Assembly (NCBI RefSeq): GCF_022045235.1
Contig: NW_027266272.1
Location: 29,140,001-29,204,000, forward strand
DNA length: 64,000 nucleotides
From: Haliotis cracherodii
Lineage: Eukaryota
Direction: 5' to 3'
Made by a program: the position numbers and the translations under genes. Each line of letters begins with the position of its first letter. The first letter of the stretch is position 1. Of this stretch, positions 1-37,113 are shown in pieces. The notes beneath the pieces are model-generated. The model worked only from the letters and a program-made list of their open reading frames with translations, searched no databases and was not told the origin of the DNA.

Positions 1-298
1 CCATGTTGCCTACTGCCACCTGCCCTTGCCAACGGTAATTTAAGGAAAGAAAAAGTTAAAGTGTAACCTATGCAAATCTTTCAAAATCGTTATATTACTC
101 ATGTTATATTTCTGTATAGCAGCAATTCTTGTAAGCAAGAACCCATACTTAACCTGAAACAAACAATTACATTAACACCAGGAACAATGACAATTGAGTT
201 TGTTTAACATAGATTACGACGGCACCTTATCATTATAAACGGAACATTTTCCCCAAGTAATTTGATTCATTAAAGCGCTAATAAAATCCTCTTTCAAG

Positions 299-540
299 AA
301 GGGTAACTCTATTTACCTATTAAACTCTACCAGAGTAGTTTCCCTTAGAATGATCTTCGCATTTCATAACTTTTAAGATCCAATCTAAACAGGCGACGTA
401 CCCAATGTTGATGTGTATATTTCACAATGTAAAGGCAGACGGAAGTGCCAAGTGATTCATAAAGTCGACGCATGCGTGGACTTGCCTTCAGTCATGGCGT
501 CATGGCAACTATTAGGCCTTCCTGTGTGTCAGCCATTTTG
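299..540 (+). promoter_or_regulatory. Putative TATA-less promoter, copy 1
   Basis: CGGAAGTG (ETS) at 440-447, palindrome ACGCATGCGT (NRF1-like) at 468-477, CTTCCTG at ~518-524 and GCCATTTTG (YY1) at 532-540. Locally CpG-rich and conserved in all four units just upstream of a GTATGT donor. Confidence 0.65.
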
Positions 541-626
541 AGAGATATCACTGGAAGTTTTCGCAGTTTTATCGTGCAAAATACCTGCTTTAAAAGTGTG
601 TACAACTTGAAGAAGTGAAGAAAACT

Positions 627-1078
627 ATGAATCCTACTAGGACAGGTATGTGAAATTGGCCTTTTTACCAGTGTTACGGTTGGATGAAGCTGTTTTAACA
701 TGTTTACAATGCATAAAATAGACGCTGATCTTTCGATCTTTCTATACTCCAATTTCAATTTTCAATGTCTGCATGTGCCTATGTGGGTCTTAATATTATG
801 GAGTTGCACAATAACAGTAGGTTGTTGTTTCTAACCTGAACAGTTGTACTAAATGTACCCGGTGTGAAAACGTAACATGATACACCCCATAATCGACTGA
901 GGTAAAGGGACATTGTCGGATCCCTGCAGACTCGTTTTCAAGACACATAGAATTAATGAATTTTGTCCTTTATCAGAAAGAATAGCCTTGATCGTAACTT
1001 CATCCTTTATTGAATACTACTTTGAGCGACACATGTGTACGTTTTATAAATGTATACTGCTCTTCAGTACTATCATAA
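627..1078 (+). other. Putative leader exon end, intron 1 (646-1067) and spliced uORF MNPTRTVLS* whose TAA overlaps the main ATG
   Basis: ATG at 627, donor CAG|GTATGT at 646 and acceptor tcttcAG|T at 1066-1067. The joined frame stops at TAA 1076-1078 inside TAATG. Confidence 0.45.
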
Positions 1079-2346
1079 TGATGAATTGCTTGGTGGTAGT
1101 CCCTGTGACCCGCTTGCCGCCCGGGCTGCCAACAGTGGTGATGGGAGATGGGACCAGATGTCTGGTAGAGAACAACACTATCTGGATACCAGCTGGTAAT
1201 CCTGTTAACTTCTCCCTGGGTGCTGGTAACCTACAGCCAAGACTCCTGCAACCTGGAGTTCAGCCATCTGTGACTGGTATCCCCCTGCCTCCTGCAGTCC
1301 AGGCACCACCTTGCAGTAGACGTAGGGAGACGATGCCTGTCAGCCAGCCGCCTGTCAGCCTGCCCAGTTCAGAGATGGACCTACAGCTGATAAGACCAGA
1401 GGTATTATTATATTTATGCTAATACATGTACCAGAATGTAACACAAAAAGTATGATTTTGTTTTTTAATCAATAAAGAATCAAGATGAGACTTTGACTGT
1501 ATCACCCATCAGGCCTTCTCCTGTGTTCTGCCCCAACTTGACCAACCGAGTCCAGTTCCTCCTTCCCAGTCTGCTAATGTTGAACCTCGAGCCATATCTT
1601 CAACAAGGAATCCCAAACCCAATTCCAAGACCCCTATCCAACTAAAGCAAAAACCTGAGCTCAAGCCCTGCAAACGCAAGCCCCGCACCTTCAGGCCAAA
1701 ACCTCAGCCAAAGCTTCGCATTCCCAAGGAGAAAGTGGGCAAGCATCAACCTGAGAGCAAGCCTTACTTTGTACCTCAGCCTCTTGGAGCTCGGCACATG
1801 AAACCCCAGAGCAAACCCCTTGGGAACCGTATCACTAAGCCCTCTGGTAGTCATGGTATCATTAAGACCTCATCTAAGCTTAGTTTTGGTGAACAGTTGT
1901 TGTCTGCTGATTGTGCTTACATAAAATCAAAGTCTGTCTTGCCAAGTACAGGATGCAAGACCTTGCCTGTCCCTGTAAAGAATGTAAAGGATAAGGTTGT
2001 TTCAACATCGGAGAGTGCTAAGTCAGGTGGTTTCACTGCTGCAACAGTAAGTGTAAATCCTGACAAGTCAGTGGACAGAGCTGAGCCTAACTCTGATGAT
2101 GAATATGATGTGGAATATCTGTATCTTACTAAACTGATTTTAAGGAAAAAGAAGAAACCCACTGCTGAGCCCAGTAAGGAGTCCCTGCCCTCACGCAAGA
2201 GGAAGTGCCCAGATGACAACAGCGAGGTGCCCCAAGCTGTGAAGCAGGCAAGACTGGAGGAGCCCCAGGACACTCTGGAGGACCTGGAAGCTCTCCTGGC
2301 TGAGTACAGCTCCAGTCTCTCATCTGGCACCAGGGACTTCTTCTAA
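1078..2346 (+). CDS. Spliced CDS join(1078..1401,1513..2346): uncharacterised ~385-aa Pro/Lys/Ser-rich, probably disordered nuclear protein
   Basis: Exon 1078-1401 (MMNCLVVVP...LQLIRPE) ends at a phase-0 GAG|GTATTA donor. The downstream frame is open from 1489 to 2346 with a phase-0 acceptor ccatcAG|GCC at 1511-1512 and a TTTGAC branch-like motif. Several paralogue differences in this frame are synonymous (gcc/gct, cta/ctt, acc/act, caa/cag). Motifs: KRKPR, RKKKK, RKRK...KQARL and DTLEDLEALLAEY. Confidence 0.72.
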
Positions 2347-2369
2347 ACACTGTAAGGGGCAGGGAACAG

Positions 2370-2445
2370 GTAGGTATAGATTAGTGTGTAGTATATAGGT
2401 TAATAATCGTACATGTGATCTTTCTCTAATCCTTTCATTGTGCAG
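2370..2445 (+). other. Putative 76-nt 3' UTR intron
   Basis: CAG|GTAGGT donor 23 nt after the stop, CTAAT branch point at ~2426-2430, pyrimidine tract and TGCAG acceptor. Confidence 0.5.
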
Positions 2446-2559: not shown

Positions 2560-5280
2560 TGCTCTACCCCTTGTATCTATATTCCTACTTTGCCTTTATG
2601 TCCTACAGTACCCTACTCTGTCTAATCTAAATGTTGTATGTTCTACTCTACTCTGCTGTGTACTATCACACTGTACCATACCCTGCATTGCCCAACTATA
2701 TTCTCTTCTGCACTGTCCTTCGTTACTTTCTTCTACGCTGTACCTTCACCAATCCTGCTTACAGAACTCTGTACTCTCCTAATAAGCCTCAACCGTACTG
2801 CCCTTCCCCCTGTAATGTCCTACCCTCCTCTGCACTGTCCTACTCTACCCTAGCCTGTACTGGTCTACTCTACCATACTCTGTACTGTTCTATTCTACCC
2901 TCCCCTTTATTGTCCTACTCTACCCTCCCCTGTACTTTCCTACTCTACCCTGCACTGTCCTACTCTACCCTCCCCTGTACTCTCCTACCCTACCCTACTA
3001 TCCTCCTATGTACTATGCTATCCTGTACTCTACTATTCTGTAGTGTTCTACTCTTTACTGTCCTACCCTGTACTGTCCTTTTCTACCCTACCCTGTACTG
3101 TCCTACTTTACCCTACTTTACCCTACTTTGTAGTATTGTACTGTCCTACTCTATTGTTCTATTCTGTACTATCCTACCCTACCCTACAATTTACTGTCCT
3201 ACCCTACCCTATTATGTTCTGTTCTACTTTACCCTACTTTGTACTATCCTACTCTAGCCTACTCTGTATTGGCCTATCCTGTCATGTCCACAAAGGGTTG
3301 CATACAGGTAAATGACTTGGACCTAAGAAATGTAATAAGTCAATGGCAAAAGTCAATAAGTCAAATAAACAAAGATGGCGGATGCAGTATAATTTCGAAG
3401 TTCGATCTGTACTTTAAAAAAAATCCGGCATAGTTTCTGCGCACCTGGCTATCCACTGGGTCTGGGAGCAAAAATGCCATAAACATCACTTCTCATGCTC
3501 CAGACACAAGGACAACTGTCACAAGCGTGCAATGTCTCTGACCCTTTCCCCATGTTAAAGCATATTGAAAAAAATTACCTTGTACATACTTACCTTTTGT
3601 TGAAATAAACAACTTAAGACATTAATACAACGTATATCCCTGTGTTATGGGTTTTCGAACGCTGTAGAAACATTCATAATTTTCTCGCTAATGCATGAAT
3701 AACTGTAAAACATCTCATTCACTTATAAAGGACATGTTCATCTTAAAAACTAACTCTGAACTGTCCTACCCTACTCTGCATTGTCCTTAGCCTACTCTAC
3801 TCTGTACTGTCCTACTCTACCCTACTCTGTACTGTCCTACTCTACCCTACTCTGTACTGTCCTATTCCAACCTACTCTGTACTGTCCTACTCTACCCTAC
3901 TCTGTACTGTCCTACTCTACCCTACTCTGTACTGTCCTACTCTACCCTACTCTGTACTGTCCTATTCCACCCTACTCTGTACTGTCCTACTCTACCCTAT
4001 TCTGTACTGTCCTACTCTACCCTGCACTGTCCTACTCTACCCTCCCCTGTACTCTCCTACCCTACCCTACTATCCTCCTATGTACTATGCTATCCTGTAC
4101 TCTACTATTCTGTAGTGTTCTACTCTTTACTGTCCTACCCTGTACTGTCCTTTTCTACCCTACCCTGTACTGTCCTACTTTACCCTACTTTACCCTACTT
4201 TGTAGTATTGTACTGTCCTACTCTATTGTTCTATTCTGTACTATCCTACCCTACCCTACAATTTACTGTCCTACCCTACCCTATTATGTTCTGTTCTACT
4301 TTACCCTACTTTGTACTGTCCTACTCTAGCCTACTCTGTATTGGCCTATCCTGTCATGTCCACAAAGGGTTGCATACAGGTAAATGACTTGGACCTAAGA
4401 AATGTAATAAGTCAATGGCAAAAGTCAATAAGTCAAATAAACAAAGATGGCGGATGCAGTATAATTTCGAAGTTCGATCTGTACTTTAAAAAAAATCCGG
4501 CATAGTTTCTGCGCACCTGGCTATCCACTGGGTCTGGGAGCAAAAATGCCATAAACATCACTTCTCATGCTCCAGACACAAGGACAACTGTCACAAGCGT
4601 GCAATGTCTCTGACCCTTTCCCCATGTTAAAGCATATTGAAAAAAATTACCTTGTACATACTTACCTTTTGTTGAAATAAACAACTTAAGACATTAATAC
4701 AACGTATATCCCTGTGTTATGGGTTTTCGAACGCTGTAGAAACATTCATAGTTTTCTCGCTAATGCATGAATAACTGTAAAACATCTCATTCACTTATAA
4801 AGGACATGTTCATCTTAAAAACTAACTCTGAACTGTCCTACCCTACTCTGCATTGTCCTTAGCCTACTCTACTCTGTACTGTCCTACTCTACCCTACTCT
4901 GTACTGTCCTACTCTACCCTACTCTGTACTGTCCTATTCCAACCTACTCTGTACTGTCCTACTCTACCCTACTCTGTACTGTCCTACTCTACCCTACTCT
5001 GTACTGTCCTACTCTACCCTACTCTGTACTGTCCTATTCCACCCTACTCTGTACTGTCCTACTCTACCCTATTCTGTACTGTCCTACTCTACCCCACTCT
5101 GTCTTGTCCTACCCTACCCTACTCTGCATTGTCCTTAGACTACCCTACTCTGTACTGTCCTACTCTACCCTACTCTGCACTGTCCTACTCTGTACTGTCC
5201 TACTCTACCATACTCTGTACTGTCCTACTCTATCCTACTCTACCTTATGTAGTGTCCTACCATCTACCCTTCTCTCAACT
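2560..5280 (+). repeat. Satellite A (25-bp CCTACTCTGTACTGTCCTACTCTAC, built of 5-mers), interrupted by a ~480-bp non-satellite segment at ~3280-3755 and ~4352-4828
   Basis: Direct 25-bp periodicity (e.g. 3790-4020). Degenerate at the 5' edge. Confidence 0.92.
2940..5090 (+). repeat. Recent 1072-bp tandem duplication, unit 1 only
   Basis: ORF pairs 3043/4115, 3239/4311 and 3781/4853 are all offset by 1072 and nearly identical. Confidence 0.95.
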
Positions 5281-7154: not shown

Positions 7155-7555
7155 CAGCCATTGTCACCAAGACCATCTCCAGACAAACATGGGTGACTGG
7201 TAAACTATTCTGATCTTGACTCATAATGCGTGTCACTCAGATCAACACTGAACGTAAGTTGATGTAACACACGTCACAGCTGGCCCTCCATGAAACACTT
7301 TTAATACTCGGCAGCCATTGTCACCAACGTGGTTTCAAGACAAATATGAGTGACTGGTAACCTATTCTCATCAAGACTCATAATGTGTGTCAGTCAGATA
7401 ACACTGAACGTAAGTTGATGTAACACACGTCACAGCTGGCCCTCCATAAAGCAATTTTAATACTCAGCAGCCATTGTCACCAACGTAGTCTCAAGACAAA
7501 CATGGGTGACTGGTAAGCTTTTCTTACCTCGACACATTAGGTGGGTTACTCAGAC
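7155..7555. repeat. ~157-bp tandem repeat (2.5 copies plus a degenerate upstream part)
   Basis: cagccattgtcaccaa at 7155, 7312 and 7468. Confidence 0.9.
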
Positions 7556-8634: not shown

Positions 8635-11600
8635 TCTCATACCCGTATGTCAGTCCTTCCACTGCAGTCCCCTTCACCTCTCATACCTCCATGTCCCCCA
8701 TACGCGTATGTCTGTCCATTCACTACAGTCCCCTTCCCCTCTCATACCTCCATGTCCCCCATACCCCTATGTGAGTCCTTCCATTGCAGTCCCCTTCCCC
8801 TCTCACACCTCCATGTCCCCCATACCCGTATGTCCGTCCTCCGACTACAGTCCCCTTTCCCTCTCATACCTCCATGTCCCCCATACAGCTTTCTCCGTCC
8901 TCCCACTACAGCCCCCTTCCCCTCTCATACCACAATGTCCCCCATACCCGTATGTCCATCCTCCCACTACAGTCCCCTTTCCCTCTCATACCTCCACGTC
9001 CCCCATACCGGTATGTCAGTCTTCCCACTACTGTCCACTTTCCCTCTCATACCTCCATGTCCAACATACCCGTATGTCAGTCCTTCCCCAAAAGTACCCT
9101 TCCCCTCTCATACCTCAATGTCCCCCATAACCTTATGTCAGTCCTCCCACTACAACCCCCTTCCCCTCTCATACCTCCGTCACCTATAGTCGTAGGTACG
9201 TCCTTCCACTACAGTCCCCTTCCCCTCTCATACCTCCATGTCCCCCATACCCGTATGTCAGTCCTTCCACTACAGTCCCCTTCCTCTCTCACACCTCCAT
9301 GTCCCAATACCTGTATGTCAGTCCTCCTACTACAGCCCCCTTCCCCTCTCACACCTCCATGTCCCCCATACCGGTATCTCAGTCCTCCCACTACTGTCCA
9401 CTTTCCCTCATACCTCAATGTCCAACATACCCGTATGTCCGTCCTCCCACCACAGTCCCCTTCCCCTCTCATACCTTCATGTTCCCCATAGCCGTATGTC
9501 AGTCCTCCCATTACAGTCCCTTTCCCCTCTCATACCTCCATGTCCCCCATACCCGTATGTCGTCCTCCCACCACAGTCCCCTTCCCCTCTCATACCTCCA
9601 TGTCCCACATACCCGTATGTCAGTCCTTCCACTACAGTCCCCATCCCCTCTCATACTACCATGTCCCCATACCCAAATGTCCGTCCTCCAACCACAGTCC
9701 CCTTCCCCTATCAAACCTCAATGTCCCCCATCCCTGTATGTCCGTCCTTCCACTGCAGTCCCCTTCCCCTTTCACACCTTCATGTCCCAATACCGGTATG
9801 TCCGTCCATCCTCTGCAGTCCCCTTCCCCTTTCTTACCTCCATGTCCCCCATACCCGTATTTCCGTCCTCCCACTACAGCCCCCTTCCTCTCTCATACCT
9901 CCATTTTCCCCATACCCGTGTATCGGTCCTCCCACTACAGTCCCCTCCCCCTCTCAAACCTCAATGTCCCCCATAACCTTATGTCAGTCCTCCCACTACA
10001 ACCCCCTTCCCCTCTCATACCTCCATGTCGGCCATACCCGTATGTCAGTCCTCCTACTACTGTCCCTTTTCCCTCTCATACCTCCAGGTCCCACATACCC
10101 GTATGTCAGTTCTTCCAGTGCAGCCCCCTTCCCCTCTCACACCTCCATGTCCCCCATACCGGTATCTCAGTCCTCCCACTACTGTCCACTTTCCCTCATA
10201 CCTCAATGTCCAACATACCCGTATGTCCGTCCTCCCACCACAGTCCCCTTCCCCTCTCATACCTCCATGTTCCTCATAGCCGTATGTCAGTCCTTCCACT
10301 ACAGTCACTTTCCCCTCTCATACCACCATGTCCCCCATACCCGTATGTCGGTCCTCCCCCCACAGTCCCCTTCCCCTCTCTTACCTCCATGCCAGCCATA
10401 CCCGTATGCGAGTCCTCCCACTACAGTCCCCTTCCCGTCTCTTACCTCCATGTCCGCCATACCCGTATATCTGTCCTCCCACCACAGTCCCCTTCCCCTC
10501 TCTTACCTCCATGTCCGCCATACCCGTATGTGAGTCCTCCCACTACAGTCCCCTTCCCGTCTCTTACCTCCATGTCCGCCATACCCGTATGTCTGTCCTC
10601 CCACTACAGTCCCCTTCGCGTCTCATACCTCCAAGTTCCCCCCGCCCGTATGTCAGTCCTCCCACTACTGTTCCCTTCCCCTCTCATACGTCCATGTCCC
10701 CCATACCGCTATGTCAGTCCTCCGACTGCAGTCCCCCTTCCCTTTCATACCTCCATGTCCCCAATACCGGTATGTCAGTGCTCCCACTGCAGTCCTCTTT
10801 CCCTCTCATAACTCCATGTCCCCCATACAGCTATGTCCGTCCTCCCACTACAGCCCCCTTCCCGTCTCATACCACAATGTCCCTAAAACCGTATGTCAGT
10901 CCCTCTTCTGCAGTCCCCTTTCCCTCTGATACCTCCATTTCACCTATACCCGTATATCCGTCCTCCCACTACAGCCCGCTTCCTCTCTCATACATCTATG
11001 TCCCTCATAGCCGTATATCTGTCCTCCCACTACAGTCCCCTTCCTCTTTCATACCCCTATGTCCCCCGTACCCGTATGTCCGTCCTCCAACTACAGTCCC
11101 CTTCCCCACTCATACCTCCATGTCCCCTTTACCCGGATGTCCGCCCTCCCACTACAGTCCCCTCCCCCTCTCATACCTCCATGTCCCCCATACCCGTATG
11201 TCCGTCCTCCCACTACAGCCACCTTCCCCTCTCATACCTCCATGTCCCCCATATCCGTATATCCGTCATCCCACTAAGGTCCCCTTCCCCTCTTATACCT
11301 CCATGTCCCACATACCCGTATATCCGTCCTCCCACTACAGCCCGCTTCCTCTCTCATACATCTATGTCCCTCTTAGCCGTATATCTGTCCTCCCACTAGA
11401 GTCCCCTTCCTCATTGATACCTCCATGTCCCTCGTACCCGTATGTCCGTCCTCCAACTACAGTCCCCTTCCCCTCTTATACCTCCATGTCCCACATACCC
11501 GTATATCCGTCCTCCCACTACAGCCCGCATCCTCTCTCATACATCTATGTCCCTCTTAGCCGTATATCTGTCCTCCCACTAGAGTCCCCTTCCTCATTGA

Positions 11601-12112
11601 TACCTCCATGTCCCTCGTACCCGTATGTCCGTCCTCCAACTACAGTCCCCTTCCCCTCTTATACCTCCATGTCCCACATACCCGTATATCCGTCCTCCCA
11701 CTACAGCCCGCTTCCTCTCTCATACATCTATGTCCCTCTTAGCCGTATATCTGTCCTCCCACTAGAGTCCCCTTCCTCATTGATACCTCCATGTCTCCCA
11801 TACCCGTATGTCCGTCCTCCAACTACAGTCCCCTTCCCCACTCATACCTCCATGTCCCCTACACCCGTATGTCCGCCCTCCCACTACGGTCCCCTTCCCC
11901 ACTCATACCTCCATGTCCCCCATACCCGTATGTCCGTCCTCCCACTACAGCCCCCTTCCCCTCTCATACCTCCATGTCCCCCATACCAGTATATCCGTCC
12001 TCCCACTAAGGTCCCCTTTCCTTCTTATACCCCCATGTCCCCCATAACAATATGACCGTCCTTCAACTACAGTCCCCTTCCTTTTTCATACCTCCATGTC
12101 CCACATACCCGT
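8635..12112 (+). repeat. Satellite B (61-bp CCCATACCCGTATGTCCGTCCTCCCACTACAGTCCCCTTCCCCTCTCATACCTCCATGTCC), ~57 copies; 183-bp trimer HOR at ~11280-11830
   Basis: Monomer starts at 8641, 8702, 8763 and 8824. The TAGAG variant occurs at 11397, 11580 and 11763. Confidence 0.95.
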
Positions 12113-12593
12113 AAGTTTTTATTTTGACATGTGCAATATCGATACCAGATATTTAACTTTTCGGCATATATTCGTTATGGTGTCTTTATTTGTCGTATAT
12201 GACGTCACATTAGGTTAGCAGATAGAAATATTTTTCTGCTAATCTAATACAACACGACATATAGTAGTGGTATATGGCTACAAAAGACACAAAACTAATA
12301 ATATATCCCGTGCCGTTACTTCCGACCTCCACATATAGGTTCCATCCTCTGTCATACCCCTATGTTGCCTACTACCACCTGCCCTTGCCAACAGGAAAGA
12401 AAACATTGTTAAAGTGTAACCTATTACACATCTTTCAAAATCGTTATTAATATTACTCCTTTTAAACTTCTGTATAGCAAGCACCCATACTAAACCTGAA
12501 TAAACAAAATTATTACATTAACACCAGGAAAAATGACAATTGAGTTGATTTAACATAGATTACGACGGCACCTTATCATTATAAACGGAACAT

Positions 12594-12900: not shown

Positions 12901-13433
12901 AGAGATATCACTGGAAGTTTTCGCAGTTTTATCGTGCAAAATACGGGCTTTAAAAGTGTGTACGACTTGAAGAGGTGCGGAAAACTATGAATCCTACTAG
13001 GAAAGGTATGTGAAATTGGCCTTTTTACCTGTGTTAAAGCTGGATGAAGCTGCTTTAATATGTTTAAACGCATAAAATAGACGCTGATCTTAAATACTCC
13101 AATTTTAATTTTCATTGTCTGTGTGTGGGTCTTAATATTATGGAGTTGCACAATAACTGTAGGTTTTTATTTCTAACCAGAACATTTGAGTTGTGCTAAA
13201 TGTACCCGGTGTGAAAACTTAACATGATACACACCCCATAATCGACTTAGGGTAAGGGAAATTGTAGGATCCCTGGAGACACGTTTTCAAGACACATATA
13301 GGCTAATTTATGAATTTTGTCTTTTATCCAAAAGAATAATGTCTTGATCAGAACTTCATCCTTTATTAAATACTACTTTGAGCGACACGTGTGTACGTTT
13401 TAAAAATTTATACTGCTGTTCAGTTCTATCATA

Positions 13434-14687
13434 ATGATGAATTGCTTGGTGGTAGTTCCTGTGACCCGCTTGCCCTCCGGGCTGCCAACAGTGGTGATGG
13501 GAGATGGGACCAGATGTCTGGTAGACAACAAGACTATCTGGATACCAGCTAGTAATCCTGTTAACCTCACCCTGAGTGCTGGTTACCTACAGCCAAGACT
13601 CCTGCAACCTGGGGCTCAGCCATCTGTGACTGGTACCCCCCCTGCCTCCTGCAGTCCAGGCACCATCTTGCAGTAGACGTAGGGAGATGATGCCTGTAAG
13701 CCTGCCCAGTTCAGAGATGGACCTACAGCTGATGAGACCAGAGGTATATTACATTGATGCTTATACATGTAGCAGAATATAACACACACAAAAAATGTTT
13801 TGTTTCTTAATCATAAAGAATCAAAATGAGACTTTGACTGTATCCCCCATCAGGCTTTCACCTGCATTCTGCCCCAACTTGACCAACCGAGTCCAGTTCC
13901 TGATTCAAAGTCTGCCCTTGTTGAAACTCCAGCCATACCATCAACAAGCAGCCCTAAACCCAATTCCAAGACCCTTATCCAGCTTAAGCAAAAACCTGAG
14001 CTCAAACCCTGCAAACGCAAGCCCCGCACTTTCAGGCCAAAACCTCAGCCAAAGCCTCGCATTCCCAAGGAGAAAGTGAGCAAGCATCAGCCTGAAAGCA
14101 AGCCCTACTTTGTGCCTCAGCCACTTGGAGCTCAGCATATCAAAACCAAGATCAAACCCTTGGGAAGCCGTATCACTAAAGCCTCGGGTGGTCATGGTAT
14201 CAATAAGTCTTCATCTAAGCTTACCTTTGGGGAACAGTTGTTGTCTGCTGATAATGCTTACATAAAGCCAAAGTCTGTCTTGCCCAGTACAGGTTGCAAG
14301 ACCTTCCCTATCCCTGTTAAGAATGTAAATCATGAGATTGTTTCAGCATCAGAGCGCGCTAAGTCAGGTGGTGTCACTGCTGCAACAGTAAGTGTAAGTC
14401 CTGACAAGGCAGTGGACAGAGCTGAACCTAACTCTGATGATGAATATGATGTGGAATATCTGTATCTTACTAAACTGATTTTAAGGAAAAAGAAGAAACC
14501 CACTGCTGAGCCCACCAAGGAGTCCCTGCCCTCACGCAAGAGGAAGTGCCCAGATGACAACAGCGAGGTGCCCCAAGCTGAGAAGCAGGCAAGACTGGAG
14601 GAGCCCCAGGACACTCTGGAGGACCTGGAAGCTCTCCTGGCTGAGTACAGCTCCAGTCTCTCATGTGGCACCAGGGACTTCTTCTAA
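13434..14687 (+). pseudogene. Gene copy 2 (type B), frameshifted; exons 13434-13743 and 13854-14687
   Basis: C7 at 13636-13642 replaces TC5 (+1 nt), giving a stop at 13676 after 80 aa. There is also a 15-nt deletion. The last coding exon is fully open. Confidence 0.7.
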
Positions 14688-14869: not shown

Positions 14870-16395
14870 TACCCCTTGTATCTATATTCTCACTTTGCCT
14901 TTATGTCCTACAGTACCTGCTCTGTTGGTATCTAATCTAAATGTTGTATGTCGTCTTCTACTCTAGTCTGCTGTGTACTGTCACACTGTACCATACCCAC
15001 TGCATTGTCCAACTTTACTTTCTTCTGTACTGCCCTACGTTACTTTCTTCTACACTGTACCCTTATCAATCCTGCTTACTGAACTCTGTACTATGCTAAT
15101 AAGCCTCATCTGTACTGTCCTACCCTGTAATGTCCTACCTTCCTCTGTACTGTCCTACTCTACCCTCTCTTGTACTGTCGTACTTTGTACTGTTCTATCG
15201 TACCTTACTCTGTACTATCCTAATCTACTGTCCTGTACTGTCCTTCTCTGTACTGTTCTACCCTACGCTCCCCGGTACTCCCCTTCCATACCCTACTGTA
15301 CTGTCCTTCTCTGAACTGCCCTACTCTACCCTCTTTACCCTCTTTACTAGCCTACTCTACTGTCCTAGTCTGTACTGCCCTACTCTACCCTTCCCTGTAC
15401 TGTGCTACTCTACCTTACTCTGCAGTATCCTACTCTACTGTCCAACTCTGTACTGCCCTACTCTACCCTTCCCTGTACTGTGCTATTCTACCTTACTCCT
15501 TATTATCCTACATTACTGTCCTAGGCTGTACTGCCCTACTCTACCCTACCTTATCCTGTGCTACTCTACCTTATTCTGCAGTATCCAACTCTGTACTGCC
15601 CTACTCTACCCTTCCCTGTACTGTGCTACTCTACCTTACCCCTTACTATCCTACTGTACTGTCCTAGGCTGTACTGCCCTACTCTACCCTACCTTATCCT
15701 GTGCTACTCTACCTTATTCTGCAGTATCCAACTCTGTACTGCCCTACTCTACCCTTCCCTGTACTGTGCTACTCTACCTTACCCCTTACTATCCTACTGT
15801 ACTGTCCTAGGCTGTACTGCCCTACTCTACCCTACCTTATCCTGTGCTACTCTACCTTATTCTGCAGTATCCAACTCTGTACTGCCCTACTCTACCCTTC
15901 CCTGTACTGTGCTACTCTACCTTACCCCTTACTATCCTACTGTACTGTCCTAGGCTGTACTGCCCTACTCTACCCTACCTTATCCTGTGCTACTCTACCT
16001 TATTCTGCAGTATCAAACTCTGTACTGCCCTACTCTACCCTTCCCTGTACTGTGCTACTCTACCTTACCCCTTACTATCCTACTCTACTGTCCTAGTCTG
16101 TACTGCCCTACTCTACCCTACCCTATCCTAGGCTACTCTGCCTTACTCCTTACTATCCTACTCTACCCTTCCCTACCCTGTGCTAATCTACCTTACTCTG
16201 CAGTATACTACTCTACTGTCCTACTCTGTACTGCCCTACTCTACCCTTCCCTGTACTTTGCTACTCTACCTTACTCCTTACTATCCTACTCTACTGTCCT
16301 AGTCTATACTGTCCTACTCTAGCCTACTCTGAACTGTCCTACTCTGGCCTACTTTGTACTGTCCTACTCTAGCCTACTCAGTACTGTCCTACCCT
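14870..16395 (+). repeat. Satellite A, unit 2 proximal block with a 143-bp higher-order repeat (~15470-16130)
   Basis: Near-identical ORFs start at 15558, 15701, 15844 and 15987. Confidence 0.92.
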
Positions 16396-16864
16396 GTCAT
16401 GTCCACAAAGGGTTGTATACAGGTAAATGACTTGGACGTAAAAAATGTAATAAGTCAATGGCAAAAGTCAATAAGTCAAAGAAACAAAGTTGGAGGATGC
16501 AGTTAAATTTCGAAGTTAAATCAGTACTTTTAAAAAATCAGGTATAGCTTCTGCGCACCTGGCTACCTGCCGGGCCTGGGAGGAATAATGCCATATGTTG
16601 AAGCATATTGAAAAAAACTTACCTCGTACATACTTACCTTTTGTTGAAAAAACACAACAACATAAGACATTAATACAACATATATCCACGTGTTATGGCT
16701 TTTCGGACGCTGAAAAACATTCATAGTTTTTGCGCTAATCACATGAACAAATGTAAAAAACATCTCATTCACTTATAAAGGACAAGTTTATCTTAAAAAC
16801 AAACCATCATCTGAATATTTACAATTTCTGTGTGGCGCCACACCCCTCGTTATAGTGCAAGTAT

Positions 16865-16925
16865 TCGTGATAGAAAATGTATAAAGTCCGAAAAGCGATG
16901 TTACACCCACTCACTCACTCTTTCA
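16865..16925 (+). mobile_element. Degenerate SINE-like tail with (CACT)n
   Basis: cgtgatag...aaaagcgatgttacacccactcactcactc. Confidence 0.4.
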
Positions 16926-18595
16926 CTCCTACTTTATCCTGCTCTGTCCTACCCTACCCTACTCTGTACTGCCCTACTCTACCCTACTCTGTACTGTCCT
17001 ACTCTACCCTACTCTGTACTGTCCCACCCTACCCTACTCTGTACTGTCCCACCCTACCCTACTCTGTACTGCCCTACTCTACCCTACTCTGTACTGTCCT
17101 ACTCTACCCTACTCTGTACTGTCCCACCCTACCCTACTCTGTACTGCCCTACTCTACTCTACTCTGTACTGTCCCATCCTACCCTACTCTGTACTGTCTT
17201 ACTCTACCCTACTCTGTACTGTCCCACCCTACCCTACTCTGTACTGTCCTACTCTACCCTACTCTGTACTGTCCTACTCTACCCTACTCTGTACTGTCCC
17301 ACCCTACCCTACTCTGTACTGCCCTACTCTACCCTACTATGTACTGTCCCACCCTACCCTACTCTGTACTGTCCTACTCTACCCTACTATGTACTGTCCC
17401 ACCATACCCTACTCTGTACTGCCCTACTCTACTCTACTCTGTACTGTCCTACTCTACCCTACTCTGTACTGTCTCACCCTACCCTACTCTGTACTTCCCT
17501 ACTCTACCCTACTCTGTACTGTCCTACCCTACCCTACTCTGTACTGTCCTACTCTACCCTACTATGTACTGTCCCACCTACCCTACTATGTACTGACGTA
17601 CTCTACCCCACTCTGCACTGTCCTACTCTGTACTGTCCCACCCTACCCTACTCTGTACTGCCCTACTCTACCCTACTCTGTACTGCCCTAATCTACCCTA
17701 CTCTGTACTGTCCTACTCTACCCTACTCTGTACTGCCCTACTCTACTCTACTCTACTCTGTACTGTCCTACTCTACCCTACTCTGTACTGTCTCACCCTA
17801 CCCTACTATGTACTGCCCTACTCTACCCTACTCTGTACTGCCCTACTCTACCCTACTCTGTACTGTCCTACTCTACCCTACTCTGTACTGCCCTACTCTA
17901 CTCTACTCTGTACTGTCCTACTCTACCCTACTCTGTACTGTCTCACTCTACCCTACTCTGTACTGCCCTACTCTACCCTACTCTGTACTGTCCTACCCTA
18001 CCCTACTCTGTACTGCCCTACTCTACTCTACTCTGTACTGTCCTACTCTACCCTACTCTGTACTGTCTCACCCTACCCTACTCTGTACTGCCCTATTCTA
18101 CCCTACTCTGTACTGTCTCACTCTACCCTACTCTGTACTGCCCTACTCTACCCTACTCTGTACTGTCCTACTCTACCCTACTCTGTACTGCCCTACTCTA
18201 CTCTACTCTGTACTGTCCTACTCTACCCTACTCTGTACTGCCCTACTCTACTCTACTATGTACTGCCCTACTCTACCCTACTCTGTACTGCCCTATTCTA
18301 GCCTACTCTGTACTGTCCTACTCTACCCTACTCTGTACTGTCTCACCCTACCCTACTCTGTACTGCCCTATTCTAGCCTACTCTGTACTGTCTCACCCTA
18401 CCCTACTATGTACTGCCCTACTCTACTCTACTATCTACTGCCCTACTCTACCCTACTCTGTACTGCCCTATTCTAGCCTACTCTGTACTGTCCTACTCTA
18501 CCCTACTCTGTACTGTTCCACCCTACCCTACTATGTACTGACGTACTCTACCCCACTCTGCACTGTCCTACTCTGTACTGTCCTACTCTACCTTA
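16925..18595 (+). repeat. Satellite A, unit 2 distal homogeneous 25-bp array
   Basis: About 65 near-identical monomers. Confidence 0.95.
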
Positions 18596-25157: not shown

Positions 25158-25371
25158 AGAGATATCACTGGAGGTGTTCGCAGTTTTATCGTGCAAAATA
25201 CGACTCTAAAAGTGTGTACGACTTGAAGAGGTAGAGAAAACAATGAATCCTACTAGAACAGGTATGTGAAATTGGCCTTTTTACCAGTGATAAGGCTGGA
25301 TGAAGCTGTTTTAACATGTTTAAAACGCATAAAATAGACGCTGATCTTTCTATACTCCAATTTTAATTTTC

Positions 25372-25373
<2 letters not shown>

Positions 25374-25402
<29 letters not shown>
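25374..25402. repeat. (TG)14 microsatellite, unit 3 only
   Basis: Direct observation. Unit 2 has tgtctgtgtgtggg at the same site. Confidence 0.95.
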
Positions 25403-25660
25403 CTTAATATTATGGAGTTTTTTCTAACCAGAACATTTGAGTTGTGCTAAATGTACCCGGTGTGAAAACTTAACATGATACACACCCCATAATCGACTTA
25501 GGGTAAGGGAAATTGTAGGATCCTTACAGACACGTTTTCAAGACATATGATTAATGAATTTTGTCTTTTATCCAAAAGAATATCGTCTTGATCAGAACTT
25601 CATCCTTTATTAAATACTACTTTGAACGACACATGTGTACGTTTTATAAATGTATACTGC

Positions 25661-25778
25661 CCTACTCTTCCTTACCCTGTACTGTGCTACTCTACCTTAC
25701 TCTTTACTATCCTACTCTACTGTCCTAGTCAGTACTGCCCTACTCTACCCTACCCTATCCCCTGCTACTCTGTACTGC
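25661..25778 (+). repeat. 118-bp satellite A insertion in intron 1 of gene copy 3
   Basis: Absent from copies 1, 2 and 4. TACTGC occurs at both junctions. Confidence 0.9.
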
Positions 25779-25786
25779 TGTTCATT

Positions 25787-27040
25787 ATGATGAATTGCTT
25801 GGTGGTAGTTCCTGTGACCCGCTTGCCCTCCGGGCTACCAACAGTGGTGATGGGAGATGGGACCAGATGTCTGGTAGGCAACAAGACTATCTGGATACCA
25901 GCTGGTAATCCGGTTAACCCCACCCTGAGTGCTGGTTACCCACAGCCAAGACTCCTGCAACCTGGAGCTCAGCCATCTGTGACTGGTACCCCCCCTGCCT
26001 CCTGCAGTCCAGGCACCATCTTGCAGTAGACGTAGGGAGATGATGCCTGTCAGCCTGCCCAGTTCAGAGATGGACCTACAGCTGATGAGACCAGAGGTAT
26101 ATTACATTGATGCTTATACATGTAGCCGAATGTAACACACACACAAAAAATAAAGTTTCTTAATCATAAAGAATCAAAATGAGACTTTGACTGTATCCCC
26201 CATCAGGCTTTCACCTGCATTCTGCCCCAACTTGACCAACCGAGTCCAGTTCCTGATTCAAAGTCTGCCCTTGTTGAAACTCCAGCCATACCATCAACAA
26301 GCAGCCCCAAACCCAATTCCAAGACCCCTATCCAGCTTAAGCAAAAACCTGAGCTCAAGCCCTGCAAACGCAAGCCCCGCACTTTCAGGCCAAAACCTCA
26401 GCCAAAGCCTCGCATTCCCAAGGAGAAAGTGAGCAAGCATCAGCCTGAAAGCAAGCCCTACTTTGTGCCTCAGCCACTTGGAGCTCAGCATATCAAAACC
26501 AAGATCAAACCCTTGGGAAGCCGTATCACTAAAGCCTCGGGTGGTCATGGTATCAATAAGTCTTCATCTAAGCTTACCTTTGGGGAACAGTTGTTGTCTG
26601 CTGATAATGCTTACATAAAGCCAAAGTCTGTCTTGCCCAGTACAGGTTGCAAGACCTTCCCTATCCCTGTTAAGAATGTAAATCATGAGATTGTTTCAGC
26701 ATCAGAGCGCGCTAAGTCAGGTGGTGTCACTGCTGCAACAGTAAGTGTAAGTCCTGACAAGGCAGTGGACAGAGCTGAACCTAACTCTGATGATGAATAT
26801 GATGTGGAATATCTGTATCTTACTAAACTGATTTTAAGGAAAAAGAAGAAACCCACTGCTGAGCCCAGTAAGGAGTCCCTGCCCTCACGCAAGAGGAAGT
26901 GCCCAGATGACAACAGCGAGGTGCCCCATGCTGTGAAGCAGGCAAGACTGGAGGAGCCCCAGGACACTCTGGAGGACCTGGAAGCTCTCCTGGCTGAGTA
27001 CAGCTCCAGTCTCTCATGTGGCACCAGGGACTTCTTCTAA
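25787..27040 (+). pseudogene. Gene copy 3 (type B), frameshifted; exons 25787-26096 and 26207-27040
   Basis: Same C7 frameshift (25989-25995), stop at 26029. The intron-1 acceptor is lost next to a satellite insertion. Confidence 0.72.
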
Positions 27041-29655: not shown

Positions 29656-30074
29656 CATGTCCACAAAGGGCTGTATATAGGTAAATGACTTAGACGTAAG
29701 AAATGTAATAAGTCATTGGCAAAAGTCAATAAGTCAAATCATTACTTTTAAAAAATCAGGTATAGTTTCTGCGCACCTGGCTACCTGCCGGGCCTGGGAG
29801 GAATAATGCCATATGTTGAAGCATATTGAAAAAAACTTACCTCATACATACTTACCTTTTGTTGAAAAAACAAAACAACATAAGACATTAATACAACATA
29901 TATCCATGTGTTATGGCTTTTCGGACACTGAAGAAACATTCATAGTTTTTGCGCTAATCACAAATGTAAAAAACATCTCATTCACTTATAAAGGACAAGT
30001 TTATCTTAAAAACAAACCATCATCTGAGTATTTACAATTTCTGTGTGACGCCACACCCCTCGTTATAGTGCAAG

Positions 30075-35325: not shown

Positions 35326-35847
35326 AGAGATATCACTGGAAGTTTTCACAGTTTTATCGTGCAAAATACGGGCTTTAAAAGTGTGTACAACTTGATGAGG
35401 TGGAGAAAACTATGAATCCTACCAGGACAGGTATGTGTCATTATCCTTTTTACCAGTGATAAAGCTGGATGAAGCTGTTTAAATATGTTTAAAAAGCATA
35501 AATAGACGCTGATCTTTCTATACTTCAATTTTAATTTTCATTGTCTGTATATGGGTGTTAATATTATGGAGTTGCACAATAACAGTAGGTTGTTGTTTCT
35601 AACCTGAACAGTTGTACTAAATGTACCCAGTGTTAAAACGTAACATGATACACACCCCATAATCGACTCAGGAACAGAGAAATTGTAGGATCCCTGCAGA
35701 CATGTTTTCAAGACACCTAGAATTAATGACTTTTGTCTTTTATCTAAAAGAATGGTCTTGATCAGAACTTCATCCTTTATTAAATACTTCTTTGAGCCTC
35801 ACGTGTTTGCGTTTTATAAATGTATACTGCTCTTCAGTACTATCATA

Positions 35848-37113
35848 ATGATGAATTGCTTGGTGGTAGTTCCTGTGACCCTCTTGCCGCCCGGGCTGCC
35901 AACAGTGGTGATGGGAGATGGGACCAGATGTCTGGTAGACAACAGCACTATCTGGATACCAGCTGGTGACGCTATTAACCTCTCCCTGGGTGCTTGTTAC
36001 CCACAGCCAATCCTCCTGCAACCTGGAGTTCAGCCATTTGTGACTGGTATCCTCCTGCCTCCTGCAGTCCAGGCACCACCTTGCAGTAGACGTAGGGAGA
36101 TGATGCCTGTCTGCCAACTGCCTGTCAGCCTGCCCAGTTCAGAGATGGACCTACAGCTGATGAGACCAGAGGTATATTATATTTATGCTAATACATGTAC
36201 CAGAATGTAACACAAAAAGTATGTTTTTCTTTCTTAATCATAAAGAATCAAAATGAGACTTTGACTGTATCACCCATCATGCCTTCTCTTGTGTTTTGCC
36301 CCGACTTGACCAACCGAGTCCAGTTCCTCCTTCCCAGTCTGCTAATGTTGAAACTCAAGCCATACCATCAACAAGCAGCCCCAAACCCATTCCAAGACCC
36401 CTATCCAGCTGAAGCCAAAACCTGAGCTCAAGCCCTGCAAACGCAGACCCTGCACTTTCAAGCCAAAACCTCAGCCAAAGCCTCGCATTCCCAAGGAGAA
36501 AGCGAGCAAGCATCAGCCTGAGTGCAAGCCCTACTTTGTGCCTCAGCCTCTTGGAACTCAGCATATGAAACCCCAGAGCAAAACCCTGGTGAACCGTATC
36601 ACTAAGCCCTCTGGTAGTCATGGTATCATTAAGACCTCATCTAAGCTTAGTTTTTGTAAACAGTTGTTGTCTGCTGATTGTGCTTACATAAAGTCAAAGT
36701 CTGTCTTGCCCAGTACAGGTTGCAAGACCTTGCCTGTCCCTGCTAAGAATGTAAATGATGAGGTTGTTTCGGCATCAGAGAGTCCTAAGTCAGGTGGTGT
36801 CATTGCTGCAACAGTAAGTGTAAGTCCTGATAAGGCAGTGGACAGGGCTGAGCCCAACTCTGAGGATGAATATGATGTGGAATATCTGTATCATACTAAA
36901 CTAATTTTAAGGAAAAAGAAGAAACCCACTACTGAGCCCAGTAAGGAGTCCCTTCCCTCACGCAAGAGGAAGTGCCCAGATGACAAAAGCGAGGTGCCCC
37001 AAGCTGTGAAGCAGGCAAGACTGGAGGATCCCCAGGACACTCTGGAGGACCTGGAAGCTCTCCTGGCTGAGTATAGCTCCAGTCTCTCGTCTGGCACCAG
37101 GGACTTCTTCTAA
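35848..37113 (+). pseudogene. Gene copy 4 (type A), disabled
   Basis: Exon 35848-36171 is intact. The acceptor is changed CAG>CAT at 36278-36280, and a 1-nt deletion near 36389 (aaacccattcc vs aaacccaattcc) makes the last exon 833 instead of 834 nt. Confidence 0.72.

What the first reader, a model, noticed from the sequence alone, without database searches (positions are those of the whole stretch)
1078..2346. The 169-aa and 203-aa ORFs are one spliced 385-aa protein built like a disordered transcription cofactor
A phase-0 GT-AG intron (1402-1512) joins them and adds 74 codons upstream of the called 203-aa ORF. The layout is a small hydrophobic, beta-prone N-terminal module (CLVVVPV...TVVMGDGTRCLVENNTIWIP), a long Pro/Lys/Ser linker, an acidic-aromatic patch (SDDEYDVEYLY), RKKKK, a bipartite NLS-like RKRK-x13-KQARL, and a terminal acidic amphipathic helix DTLEDLEALLAEY containing LxxLL. 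That last motif class is typical of activation domains and coactivator docking. PVNFS/PVNLT/AINLS loosely resembles the CtBP PxDLS/PxNLS motif (weak).
Basis: partly seen in the sequence, partly recalled or inferred. Interest (0 to 1): 0.75.

Follow-up and report, generated by a model that had tools for sequence, protein, structure and literature searches.

The report
Abalone-only disordered nuclear-type gene, amplified
The two ORFs are indeed parts of one spliced gene, but it has a third small upstream exon, makes a long and a short product, and is one of about 29 tandem copies of an abalone-only gene for a mostly unfolded, probably nuclear protein whose function is untested.

Summary
It is kept in 28 of 29 genomic copies. 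It matches the RPE|AFSC junction of public Haliotis protein models, and one RNA-like contig crosses it. The gene starts in a 19-nt coding mini-exon (627-645), spliced 645|1100 in two RNA-like runs, which gives 384 aa (MNPTRT-VPVTRL...). 'MMNCLVV' is intron.

A second acceptor inside exon 3 (AG 2143-2144) gives a 114-aa short form ending EKEETHC. RefSeq models of two other abalones have this form, and contig ends in three RNA-like runs show it.

The gene is one of at least 29 copies (23 intact) in satellite-embedded tandem arrays on three contigs. Only 1 of the 4 copies in this window is intact. No relative outside Haliotis was found among 1.84 billion proteins, Pfam, PDB or viral contigs.

AlphaFold gives disorder plus two confident isolated helices. 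Purifying selection is concentrated on a basic block and on the last ~75 residues: the acidic-aromatic helix, KKKK-x12-RKRK and the LxxLL helix.

A nuclear location is plausible. 'Transcription cofactor' is untested, and the CtBP-like motif fails in this copy. An earlier report in this scan already described the family.

The parts
502..618 (+). Conserved upstream block with an ATG-started 38-codon upstream ORF, out of frame with the main ORF. It is either 5' leader or core promoter; the transcription start is not mapped.
   Evidence: An ATG lies 124-125 nt before the main ATG in 29 of 29 copies. The first 84 nt are 93% identical among 8 array representatives, with no frame-specific constraint. 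Homology between arrays begins near window 264.
627..645 (+). Coding part of exon 1 (MNPTRT plus the first base of the next codon), followed by donor GT at 646-647.
   Evidence: ATG plus 19 nt plus GT is present in 29 of 29 copies. Public models start MNP(S/T)T. The joint 643->1098, 'GT..AG (cut +2)', was seen in X1 and X3.
646..1099 (+). Intron 1 (454 nt).
   Evidence: the joint is in two RNA-like runs and depth is zero in X3 over 701-1035; the intron is barely alignable between arrays.
1100..1401 (+). Exon 2 (302 nt, entered in phase 1). It encodes the N-terminal module GLPTVVMGDGTRCLVENNTIWIP (1123-1191) and a variable Pro-rich stretch.
   Evidence: Three short low-confidence strands are predicted. 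The pN/pS ratio is 0.24-0.8 in the module and above 1 in codons 56-80.
1402..1512 (+).
   Evidence: GT is kept in 28 of 29 copies and AG in 28 of 29. A contig end in X1 at 1511 carries 15 letters equal to a sister copy's exon-2 end. Public models show RPE|AFSC.
1513..2346 (+). Exon 3 coding part (277 codons plus TAA at 2344-2346).
   Evidence: The frame is open in 26 of 29 copies.
1645..1782 (+). Constrained basic Pro/Lys block (KPELKPCKRKPRTFRPKPQPK...PESKPYFVPQPLGA).
   Evidence: pN/pS is 0.12-0.30 in sliding windows. Many columns are invariant in A1.
2092..2148 (+). Acidic-aromatic patch running into a predicted helix (SDDEYDVEYLYLTKLILRK).
   Evidence: pN is 0.000 over DDEYDVEYLYLTKLI. The motif is present in 23 of 23 intact copies. 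The helix has pLDDT about 89.
2143..2205 (+). Two basic clusters 12 residues apart (RKKKK 2143-2157, RKRK 2194-2205). The spacing is that of a classical bipartite NLS.
   Evidence: The pattern is present in 23 of 23 intact copies and 9 of 9 public proteins. pN/pS is 0.07-0.32. The NLS consensus itself is recalled, not tested.
2143..2168 (+). Internal alternative acceptor (AG 2143-2144) and the 7-codon out-of-frame tail EKEETHC plus TGA (2145-2168) of the 114-aa short form.
   Evidence: One search gives the translation. P0015 (114 aa) and P0013 end RPE|EKEETHC. Contig ends at 2143 in X1, X2 and X3 carry exon-2 end letters. The acceptor is kept in 29 of 29 copies.
2275..2322 (+). C-terminal acidic amphipathic helix (LEDLEALLAEYSSSLS) with LxxLL.
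   Evidence: The helix has pLDDT 81-83. L76, L79, L82 and L83 are invariant in 21 of 21 rows of A2. pN/pS is 0.07.
12987..14687 (+). Second copy in the window. It is broken: exon 2 is 288 nt instead of 302, which shifts the frame and gives 2 stops. Exon 3 is still open.
   Evidence: this copy is L006.
25243..27040 (+). Third copy in the window, with the same 14-nt shortfall in exon 2 as the second copy. Exon 3 is open.
   Evidence: this copy is L005.
35412..37113 (+). Fourth copy in the window. It is broken: the intron-2 acceptor reads AT instead of AG, and exon 3 is one base short, giving 10 stops in frame.
   Evidence: this copy is W36k.

Best explanation
Window 627-2346 holds one intact copy of a three-exon gene that is known only from abalones (Haliotis). 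The gene is amplified to at least 29 copies in head-to-tail arrays embedded in satellite DNA.

Shown here:
- The exon structure is 627-645 | 1100-1401 | 1513-2346, giving 384 aa.
- A second splice form runs from 1401 to an acceptor inside exon 3 (first exonic base 2145). It gives a 114-aa product with only the N-terminal part.
- Protein-level constraint is concentrated in a few short blocks.
- Most of the chain is predicted disordered, with two isolated helices near the C-terminus.

Inferred:
- The long form is a nuclear, intrinsically disordered adaptor. It is probably imported through the invariant KKKK-x12-RKRK pair.
- It works through short docking elements: the small N-terminal beta-prone module, the basic PxK block, the acidic-aromatic helix and the terminal LxxLL helix.
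- The short form lacks the basic clusters and both helices. It would therefore act apart from the long form or compete with it for partners of the N-terminal module.

Whether the target process is transcription is not known.
For: Gene model:
- Joint 643->1098 with GT..AG ends (cut +2) was seen in X1 (depth 182.5) and X3 (depth 5.74). Further X3 joints into 1098 carry sister copies' exon-1 letters. A contig end in X1 at 1511 joins a sister copy's exon-2 end to exon 3. X3 has zero depth over 701-1035 and depth 5-9 over 1371-1504 (all).
- Public 384-aa models read MNP..V and RPE|AFSC.
- Splice signals and the ATG are kept in 28-29 of 29 copies.

Short form.

Family:
- 31 matches on 3 contigs.
- 23 of 29 copies are intact.
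- Each array forms its own clade, and H. rufescens proteins nest inside two of these clades with support 99/92 and 98/97.

Restriction to Haliotis: 5 of 5 hits in 1.84 billion representatives are Haliotis or unnamed fragments of the same family. All hits are Haliotis.

Selection: median dN/dS is 0.58 over 240 pairs. It is 0.00-0.3 in exon-3 codons 46-90 and 191-265.

Structure: mean pLDDT is 43, with helices at 307-320 and 362-378. The C-terminal 98 aa give two helices of pLDDT 81-89 and pTM 0.23.

Motifs: the bipartite basic pattern is in 23 of 23 copies, and the LxxLL leucines are invariant in 21 of 21 rows. pI is 9.3-9.8.
Against: - One search lists no joint row for 1401->1513. Only one 15-letter contig end supports that junction directly.
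- The runs are labelled 'RNA? (a guess)' and are short Logan contigs from coded organisms. They may be other abalone species.
- With 29 similar copies, nothing shows that this particular copy is transcribed.
- Nuclear location rests on motif patterns that I recalled, not on a predictor or an experiment.
- The overall dN/dS of 0.58 is high.
- 6 of 29 copies are broken, including 3 of the 4 in this window, so the family is partly decaying.
- The AlphaFold alignments are shallow (8 and 21 close relatives), so low pLDDT is weak proof of disorder.
- No partner, tissue or developmental stage is known.
Confidence: 0.6

Rival explanations
1. One reading: the long form is a transcription cofactor. The terminal acidic LxxLL helix would be an activation or coactivator-docking element, and PVNxS would be a CtBP-type corepressor site.
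For: - The terminal helix is confident (pLDDT 81-83), amphipathic, acidic and nearly invariant.
- The protein is basic and disordered, with conserved NLS-like clusters.
- The nearest language-model neighbours are long disordered nuclear proteins, but at a score of 0.78, which is chance level.
Against: - No homology to any cofactor family was found.
- LxxLL plus acidic residues is a short, common pattern. The spacing of the leucines also fits leucine-rich export signals (recalled).
- The CtBP-like pattern fails in this copy (PVNFS). It is absent from 4 of 23 intact copies and from 4 of 9 public orthologues, including all three from H. asinina.
Confidence: 0.15
2. The array is a germline or early-embryo 'ampliconic' gene. 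Copy number would be amplified to give a burst of a nuclear or chromatin protein, as with genes embedded in macrosatellites, possibly driven by genetic conflict.
For: - There are at least 29 copies, in arrays with units of about 7-13 kb made of gene plus satellite.
- The gene is small with short introns.
- The variable segments evolve fast, with pN/pS up to 1.7-2.7.
- Each array forms its own clade, and H. rufescens proteins nest inside two of these clades (C9a 99/92, C56 98/97), so those subfamilies predate the split from H. rufescens.
- Earlier notes on this genome report other tandem arrays of candidate early-embryo regulators. I did not check those notes.
Against: No tissue or stage information could be obtained, because the runs are coded and held as contigs only. 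Windows with pN/pS above 1 also have low pS and few sites, so positive selection is not shown.
Confidence: 0.2
3. The ORF is a passenger of a satellite or higher-order repeat and has no protein function. Its apparent conservation would come from recent amplification and gene conversion.
For: - The gene is embedded in satellites.
- Copies within an array are nearly identical, with dS 0.03-0.07.
- 6 of 29 copies are broken.
- Synonymous divergence is low in the last 50 codons.
Against: - Constraint is strongly uneven along the protein. pN is 0.000-0.04 in the C-terminal blocks against 0.19-0.25 at the start of exon 3, with comparable or higher pS.
- Introns diverge far faster than exons between arrays.
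- The frame and the motifs are kept in H. asinina proteins that are only 63-78% identical overall.
- Spliced contigs exist.
Confidence: 0.05

Closest known systems
RefSeq models of the same family in Haliotis: P0014 and P0002 (H. cracherodii), P0001, P0004 and P0015 (H. rufescens), P0003, P0005 and P0013 (H. rubra), P0006, P0008 and P0009 (H. asinina). They carry names such as 'titin-like', 'nucleolar protein dao-5-like', 'TonB-like' and 'uncharacterized'.
   Same: - The three-exon layout, the 384-aa length, the RPE|AFSC junction and the conserved blocks are the same.
- P0014 and P0002 are letter-identical over exon 3 to copies L004 and L007 of this genome.
- The 114-aa short form is annotated as P0015.
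   Different: - The window's own copy is 91% (exon 3) and 88% (exon 2) identical to P0014.
- No protein identical to the window's product was flagged among the hits.
- The names given by the sources are low-complexity artefacts. No Pfam family supports them.
Genes embedded in macrosatellites, such as DUX4 in D4Z4 (recalled from general knowledge)
   Same: Each multi-kb repeat unit carries a complete small gene for a nuclear-type protein. The arrays are head to tail, partly near contig ends, and surrounded by satellite DNA.
   Different: There is no homeodomain or any other known domain. The units differ in length (about 7-13 kb) and are filled with 20-, 25- and 61-nt satellites rather than being one uniform unit. 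Expression timing is unknown.
Taxonomically restricted, intrinsically disordered proteins that work through short linear motifs (a general class, recalled)
   Same: There is no detectable relative outside one genus. The chain is mostly disordered, with a few short, strongly constrained segments.
   Different: This is a class, not a family, so it predicts no specific function.
Earlier report of this scan, s1-829589 (a six-copy array on another contig of this genome)
   Same: It almost certainly describes the same family. It reports an abalone-only, spliced, mostly unfolded, probably nuclear protein with about 29 copies in 4-5 arrays. This matches the six copies I found on contig C56.
   Different: That report concerns another array.

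Membership tests
Haliotis 384-aa family (RefSeq 'titin-like'/'uncharacterized' models P0001, P0014 and others) | Full-length sequence similarity over exons 2 and 3 | tested here: met
   Exon 3 is 90% identical to P0001 at E=4.8e-151. It is 91% identical to P0014 over 277 aa. Exon 2 is 88% identical to P0014.
Haliotis 384-aa family | Same exon junctions (MNPxxx|V... and ...RPE|AFSC...) | tested here: met
   (joint 643->1098 with cut +2; contig end at 1511).
LxxLL / acidic activation-domain cofactors | LxxLL in a predicted amphipathic helix | tested here: met
   LEALL lies in a helix of pLDDT 81-83. The leucines are invariant in 21 of 21 rows.
LxxLL / acidic activation-domain cofactors | Homology to a known coactivator family or domain | tested here: not met
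   The window's exon translations and P0001 match no Pfam family at E<=10; across the 8 members of A1 only two single-member chance matches appear (E 0.23 and 0.48). There are 0 PDB chains at E<=10. Only Haliotis proteins appear among 1.84 billion representatives.
LxxLL / acidic activation-domain cofactors | Transactivation or receptor binding | not testable with these tools
   This needs a tethering or binding assay.
CtBP-binding PxDLS-type motif proteins | Match to P-[LVIPME]-[DENS]-[LM]-[VASTRG] (pattern recalled from memory) in this copy | tested here: not met
   The window copy has PVNFS. The pattern is present in 19 of 23 intact copies.
CtBP-binding PxDLS-type motif proteins | Motif conserved across the genus | tested here: not met
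   It is absent from 4 of 9 public proteins (P0005, P0006, P0008, P0009), and P0006 lacks the segment altogether.
Proteins with a classical bipartite NLS | Two basic clusters separated by 10-12 residues (consensus recalled) | tested here: met
   RKK[KR]K-x12-[RHC]KRK is present in 23 of 23 intact copies and 9 of 9 public proteins. Function is not tested.
Macrosatellite-embedded gene arrays | Head-to-tail multi-kb units, each with a whole gene | tested here: met
   Copies recur every 7-13 kb on the same strand within sub-arrays. Homology between arrays covers window 264-814 and 1098-2415 plus satellite pieces.
Copia-type Pol beta-barrel domain (PF22936; a language-model lead for the N-terminal module) | Profile match to the Pfam family | tested here: not met
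   The Atlas score is 0.76 with 54 shared features, which is chance level. Pfam finds nothing at E<=10 for the region.

The most novel reading that the evidence does not exclude
The arrays may be an abalone-specific counterpart of macrosatellite-embedded early regulators. On this reading, a burst-expressed nuclear disordered protein acts in the germline or cleavage-stage embryo. Its activity would be set by the ratio of the long form (NLS plus two docking helices) to a built-in competitor, the 114-aa form that carries only the N-terminal module. Both forms arise from the same pre-mRNA by choice between the acceptors at 1512 and 2144.
Probability: 0.12. Interest if true: 0.6.

Novelty: new member of a known kind. 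Interest (0 to 1): 0.3.

Why it matters
This is a clear case of a gene confined to one genus that is kept in dozens of copies. Its function seems to sit in a handful of short conserved segments of an otherwise unfolded chain, and it has a conserved splice switch that removes all the C-terminal segments.

It also shows that the source names 'titin-like', 'dao-5-like' and 'TonB-like' are artefacts.

For biology, it offers testable elements: two basic clusters, two helices and one N-terminal module. No function is known, the family is already in RefSeq as uncharacterised models, and an earlier report of this scan described it. The result is therefore of moderate interest only.

Tried and rejected
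Searches that found nothing outside the family:
- Pfam on the exon translations and on 8 family members gave no real match. The only entries were zf-C3HC at E=0.23 and a cytomegalovirus family at E=0.48, each in 1 of 8 members, which I read as chance.
- A profile search of PDB sequences gave 0 hits at E<=10.
- The profile against 1.84 billion representatives gave only 5 hits, all from this family.
- Word-based searches with exon 3, with exon 2 and with the C-terminal 95 aa of P0001 gave only Haliotis proteins.
- Viral contigs gave 133 pattern matches, none confirmed.
- Rfam on window 1-38000 gave nothing.
- The bacterial-type promoter and terminator scan does not apply to an animal gene and gave nothing above shuffles.

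Weak leads rejected:
- Atlas neighbours scored 0.78 (NPAT and other long disordered nuclear proteins) and 0.76 (Pol_BBD). Both are below the level that shuffled proteins reach, and I treat them as chance.
- I did not run a fold search. Both models lack a compact fold (pTM 0.19 and 0.23), so any matches would be meaningless.
Contig ends at 1494 also occur in the DNA-like run X15, so they are genomic intron variants.
- The upstream ORF as a conserved peptide is rejected for now. pN/pS is 0.65 in its own frame against 0.38 and 0.68 in the other two frames, so the conservation is at nucleotide level.

Depth as a measure of isoform ratio:
- By my arithmetic on table 2, mean depth over exon 2 divided by mean depth over 1572-2107 is 9.7 (X1), 6.8 (X2) and 5.3 (X3), against 2.4 in the DNA-like X15.
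- This fits an abundant short form. However, the tool states that contig depth cannot rank parts of a gene, so I give it no weight.

Literature: three full-text searches found no paper on this family. I saw listings and abstract starts only and opened no paper. Supplementary tables are closed and could list these LOC ids.

Rows dropped or changed:
- A1 leaves out the partial models P0007 and P0010.
- The dN/dS and motif counts use the 23 intact copies of the 29 examined. The broken copies L005, L006, L020, L021, L022 and W36k are left out.
- For L016 and L017, exon 2 was cut to 302 nt, because my alignment had pulled 10 intron letters into it.
- The sliding windows use 9 representative copies.
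- The tree uses 23 copies plus 9 public proteins cut at the start of exon 3.
- The copy count is a lower bound, as the tool says.
Full report
**What is in the sequence.**
GT lies at 1402-1403 and AG at 1511-1512. Translating 1078-1401 gives 108 open codons, and 1513-2346 gives 277 codons plus TAA.

All the named motifs are present. One detail differs: the spacer between RKRK and KQARL is 12 residues, not 13 (my count).

**The organism and the family.**
The window is G000:C9:29140001-29204000 of a 1.18-Gb assembly. Exon 3 finds 10 proteins in 5.8 billion clusters. All are from Haliotis, and the best is a 384-aa H. rufescens model at 90% identity.

Within the window's own genome, exon 3 matches 31 places on three contigs:
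- C9 at 29.09-29.18 Mb and 29.77-29.78 Mb;
- C21 at 4.32-4.69 Mb;
- C56 at 35.80-35.84 Mb.

Four of these copies lie in this window. P0014 and P0002, named H. cracherodii by their source, are letter-identical over exon 3 to copies L004 and L007. Earlier notes of this scan call the genome black abalone.

**The gene model needs a third exon.**
The public models begin MNP(S/T)T..V, not MMNCLVV. In the window, ATG 627 opens a 19-nt coding stretch (MNPTRT plus one base) followed by GT at 646. AG at 1098-1099 precedes exon 2, which begins at 1100. The total is 19 + 302 + 831 coding bases, or 384 codons, the length of P0001, P0002 and P0014.

I laid contigs of three RNA-like runs (X1-X3) and one DNA-like run (X15) on 500-2500:
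- A joint 643->1098 with ends 'GT..AG (cut +2)', that is 645|1100, is in X1 (depth 182.5) and X3 (depth 5.74).
- Further X3 joints into 1098 carry letters of sister copies' exon 1.
- X15 has no such joint and instead carries intron letters at 1098.
- X3 has zero depth across 701-1035.

In all 29 copies I examined, the ATG, the 19 nt and the GT are kept. In the C21 and C56 copies, the sequence before the acceptor differs from that of the window copy.

- The donor GAG|GT is kept in 28 of 29 copies. The exception is L022, which is rearranged.
- The acceptor CCAT(C/T/A)AG|GCC is kept in 28 of 29 copies. The exception is the window's fourth copy, which reads AT.
- Between arrays, intron 2 is unalignable or only 28-47 nt align, while exons 2 and 3 stay 86-94% identical.
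- Public models read ...RPE|AFSC....

One search lists no joint row for 1401->1513, and this must be said plainly. The only direct trace is one X1 contig that starts its match at 1511 and carries 15 preceding letters equal to the exon-2 end of sister copies. Depth falls to 4-10 in X2 and X3 over 1371-1504.

The contigs are short unitigs (about 150 nt) that break where the copies differ, so the missing row is weak evidence against the junction.

**A second product.**
Contig ends at 2143 in X1, X2 and X3 carry up to 27 letters of exon-2 end sequence. This means exon 2 is also joined to an acceptor inside exon 3 (AG 2143-2144, in the context TTTTAAG|G). The frame shifts, and 2145-2168 reads EKEETHC followed by a stop. 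The result is a 114-aa product.

Two public models end in exactly this way: a 114-aa H. rufescens model (P0015, a cluster of 4 sequences) and an H. rubra model (P0013). Both end RPE|EKEETHC. The acceptor and a 7-codon tail are kept in 29 of 29 copies, although that stretch is also under strong constraint in the main frame.

Exon 2 and the 3' end are deeper than the skipped part in the RNA-like runs, more so than in the DNA-like run (my arithmetic). The tool warns that contig depth cannot rank parts of a gene, so I give this no weight.

**State of the copies.**
Of the 29 copies, 23 are intact in exons 1-3. The broken ones are:
- the window's second and third copies, which share a 14-nt shortfall in exon 2;
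- the window's fourth copy, which has lost the acceptor and is one base short in exon 3;
- L020, L021 and L022 on C21.

The copy under review is therefore the only intact one of the four in this window.

In the exon-3 protein tree, each array is a well-supported clade. H. rufescens P0001 nests inside the C9 clade next to L004 (support 99/92), and P0004 nests with the C56 array (98/97). H. asinina proteins lie outside. These two subfamilies are therefore older than the split between the window's species and H. rufescens, and the family occurs in all four Haliotis species found.

**Selection.**
Nei-Gojobori estimates over the 23 intact copies used counts summed per exon, and the exons were never joined. 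Median dN is 0.091, median dS is 0.149 and the median ratio is 0.58 over 240 pairs with dS above 0.02 (5th-95th percentile 0.44-0.88).

Along the protein the ratio is very uneven (9 representative copies):
- 0.12-0.30 over exon-3 codons 46-90 (KPELKPCKRKPRTFRPKPQPK...PESKPYFVPQPLGA);
- 0.00-0.32 over codons 191-235 (DDEYDVEYLYLTKLILRKKKK...SRKRKCPDDNSEV);
- 0.40-0.44 in the two windows at codons 236-255 (...KQARLEEPQDT);
- 0.07-0.13 over codons 246-270 (...DTLEDLEALLAEY);
- 0.24-0.84 over the N-terminal GLPTVVMGDGTRC...WIP module;
- about 1 or above in exon-2 codons 56-80 and exon-3 codons 166-185, where pS is low and sites are few.

**Structure.**
AlphaFold2 on P0001 with 8 family members gives mean pLDDT 43, with 299 of 384 residues under 50. 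It predicts three short strands at 18-35 (pLDDT 53-59) and helices at 232-243, 307-320 (pLDDT about 77) and 362-378 (pLDDT about 79).

The window's last 98 residues, with 21 rows in the alignment, give two isolated helices: VEYLYLTKLILRK (pLDDT about 89) and LEDLEALLAEYSSSLS (pLDDT 81-83). pTM is 0.23, so there is no compact fold. The alignments are shallow, so low confidence is only weak proof of disorder.

The proteins are basic, with pI 9.3-9.8 and 13-14% proline.

**Motifs.**
- The two basic clusters RKK(K/R)K and (R/H/C)KRK are exactly 12 residues apart in 23 of 23 intact copies and 9 of 9 public proteins. This is the spacing of a classical bipartite NLS (recalled consensus).
- The LxxLL leucines are invariant in 21 of 21 rows.
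- The CtBP-like pentapeptide matches my recalled pattern in 19 of 23 intact copies. It does not match in this copy (PVNFS). It is missing from 4 of 9 public proteins, including all three from H. asinina. I therefore reject it as a defining feature.
- Both leucine-rich helices also fit export-signal spacings that I recall. The 'activation domain' reading is thus not the only one.

**Homology.**
Nothing was found outside Haliotis:
- a profile of 8 members against 1.84 billion representatives gives 5 hits, all from the family;
- Pfam has no real match;
- PDB sequences give none;
- viral contigs give none;
- Atlas neighbours are at chance level.

Three full-text literature searches found no description. 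I saw listings only, and supplements are closed.

**Surroundings.**
Homology between the arrays covers window 264-814 (upstream region, exon 1 and the start of intron 1; 75-77% identity) and 1098-2415 (85%), plus pieces of satellite. Each gene copy in the window is followed by a 25-nt satellite. Arrays of a 61-nt unit lie further on, and 37.2-64.0 kb is one C-rich satellite based on a 20-nt unit. No other gene-like ORF or Rfam family lies between the copies.

**Verdict.**
The model needs correcting: three exons, 384 aa, a different N-terminus and a second isoform.

'Disordered with a conserved NLS-like pair and a terminal amphipathic helix' holds. 'Transcription cofactor' remains a guess, and the CtBP motif fails.

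The most likely account is a nuclear, disordered adaptor specific to the genus and encoded by an amplified gene, with a short form that lacks all the C-terminal elements.

An earlier report of this scan (s1-829589) reached the same general view from the six-copy array on another contig. My counts (about 29 copies, abalone-only, spliced, mostly unfolded) agree with it, but that report is not independent evidence.

Noticed in passing
window 502-618 (and the same place in all copies): An ATG 124-125 nt before the main start opens a 35-42 codon upstream ORF (MxTxxPSCVSAILRDITGS...). The ATG is present in 29 of 29 copies, and 26 of 29 share the same peptide. The stretch is 93% identical between arrays, which is more than the coding exons, but it shows no frame-specific constraint. 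Two public models (P0003, P0016) read it as an N-terminal extension. In this copy, a TAA at 591-593 closes the main frame upstream. It may be a regulatory upstream ORF or a core-promoter block.
   Followed up: partly
window 12987-14687, 25243-27040 and 35412-37113: The three other copies of the gene in this window are broken. Two share a 14-nt shortfall in exon 2. One has lost the intron-2 acceptor AG and is one base short in exon 3. The two frameshifted copies keep the 277-codon exon-3 frame open.
   Followed up: yes
window 37174-63999; also 8638-12113, 21644-24431 and 33751-34643: There is a 26.8-kb C-rich satellite (units of 20, 41 and 61 nt, GC skew about -0.92) and three arrays of a different 61-nt unit. 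The C-rich strand is always the gene's strand. The long ORFs listed there (up to 665 aa) are artefacts of stop-poor repeats.
   Followed up: partly
window 2820-5191, 15351-18574 and 27427-30537: A 25-nt satellite (consensus unit given) begins about 450 nt after the stop codon of the gene copies at 1, 13 and 26 kb. It is shared at lower identity with the arrays on C21 and C56. RNA-like contigs run at least to 2500, so the 3' UTR may reach towards it.
   Followed up: no
window 7155-7554 and 32149-32518: A 156-nt tandem repeat (2.4-2.6 copies) recurs between gene copies. It also matches the C21 and C56 units at 68-71% identity.
   Followed up: no
window 2218-2346 (last ~43 codons of exon 3): Synonymous divergence between arrays drops to 0.06-0.10 here, against 0.13-0.32 earlier in the exon. 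This could reflect gene conversion or constraint at nucleotide level.
   Followed up: no
P0013 (H. rubra model, 206 aa): The model fuses about 100 unrelated N-terminal residues to the short form of this gene. From memory, the added part looks like the end of a transposase-type protein. It is probably a chimeric prediction.
   Followed up: no
window 2368-2375: A strong donor-like CAG|GTAGGT lies 22 nt after the stop codon. Contig ends pile up at 2392 in all four runs, and X3 shows a replaced stretch at 2389-2448. These could be variation between copies in the 3' UTR or a 3' UTR intron.
   Followed up: no
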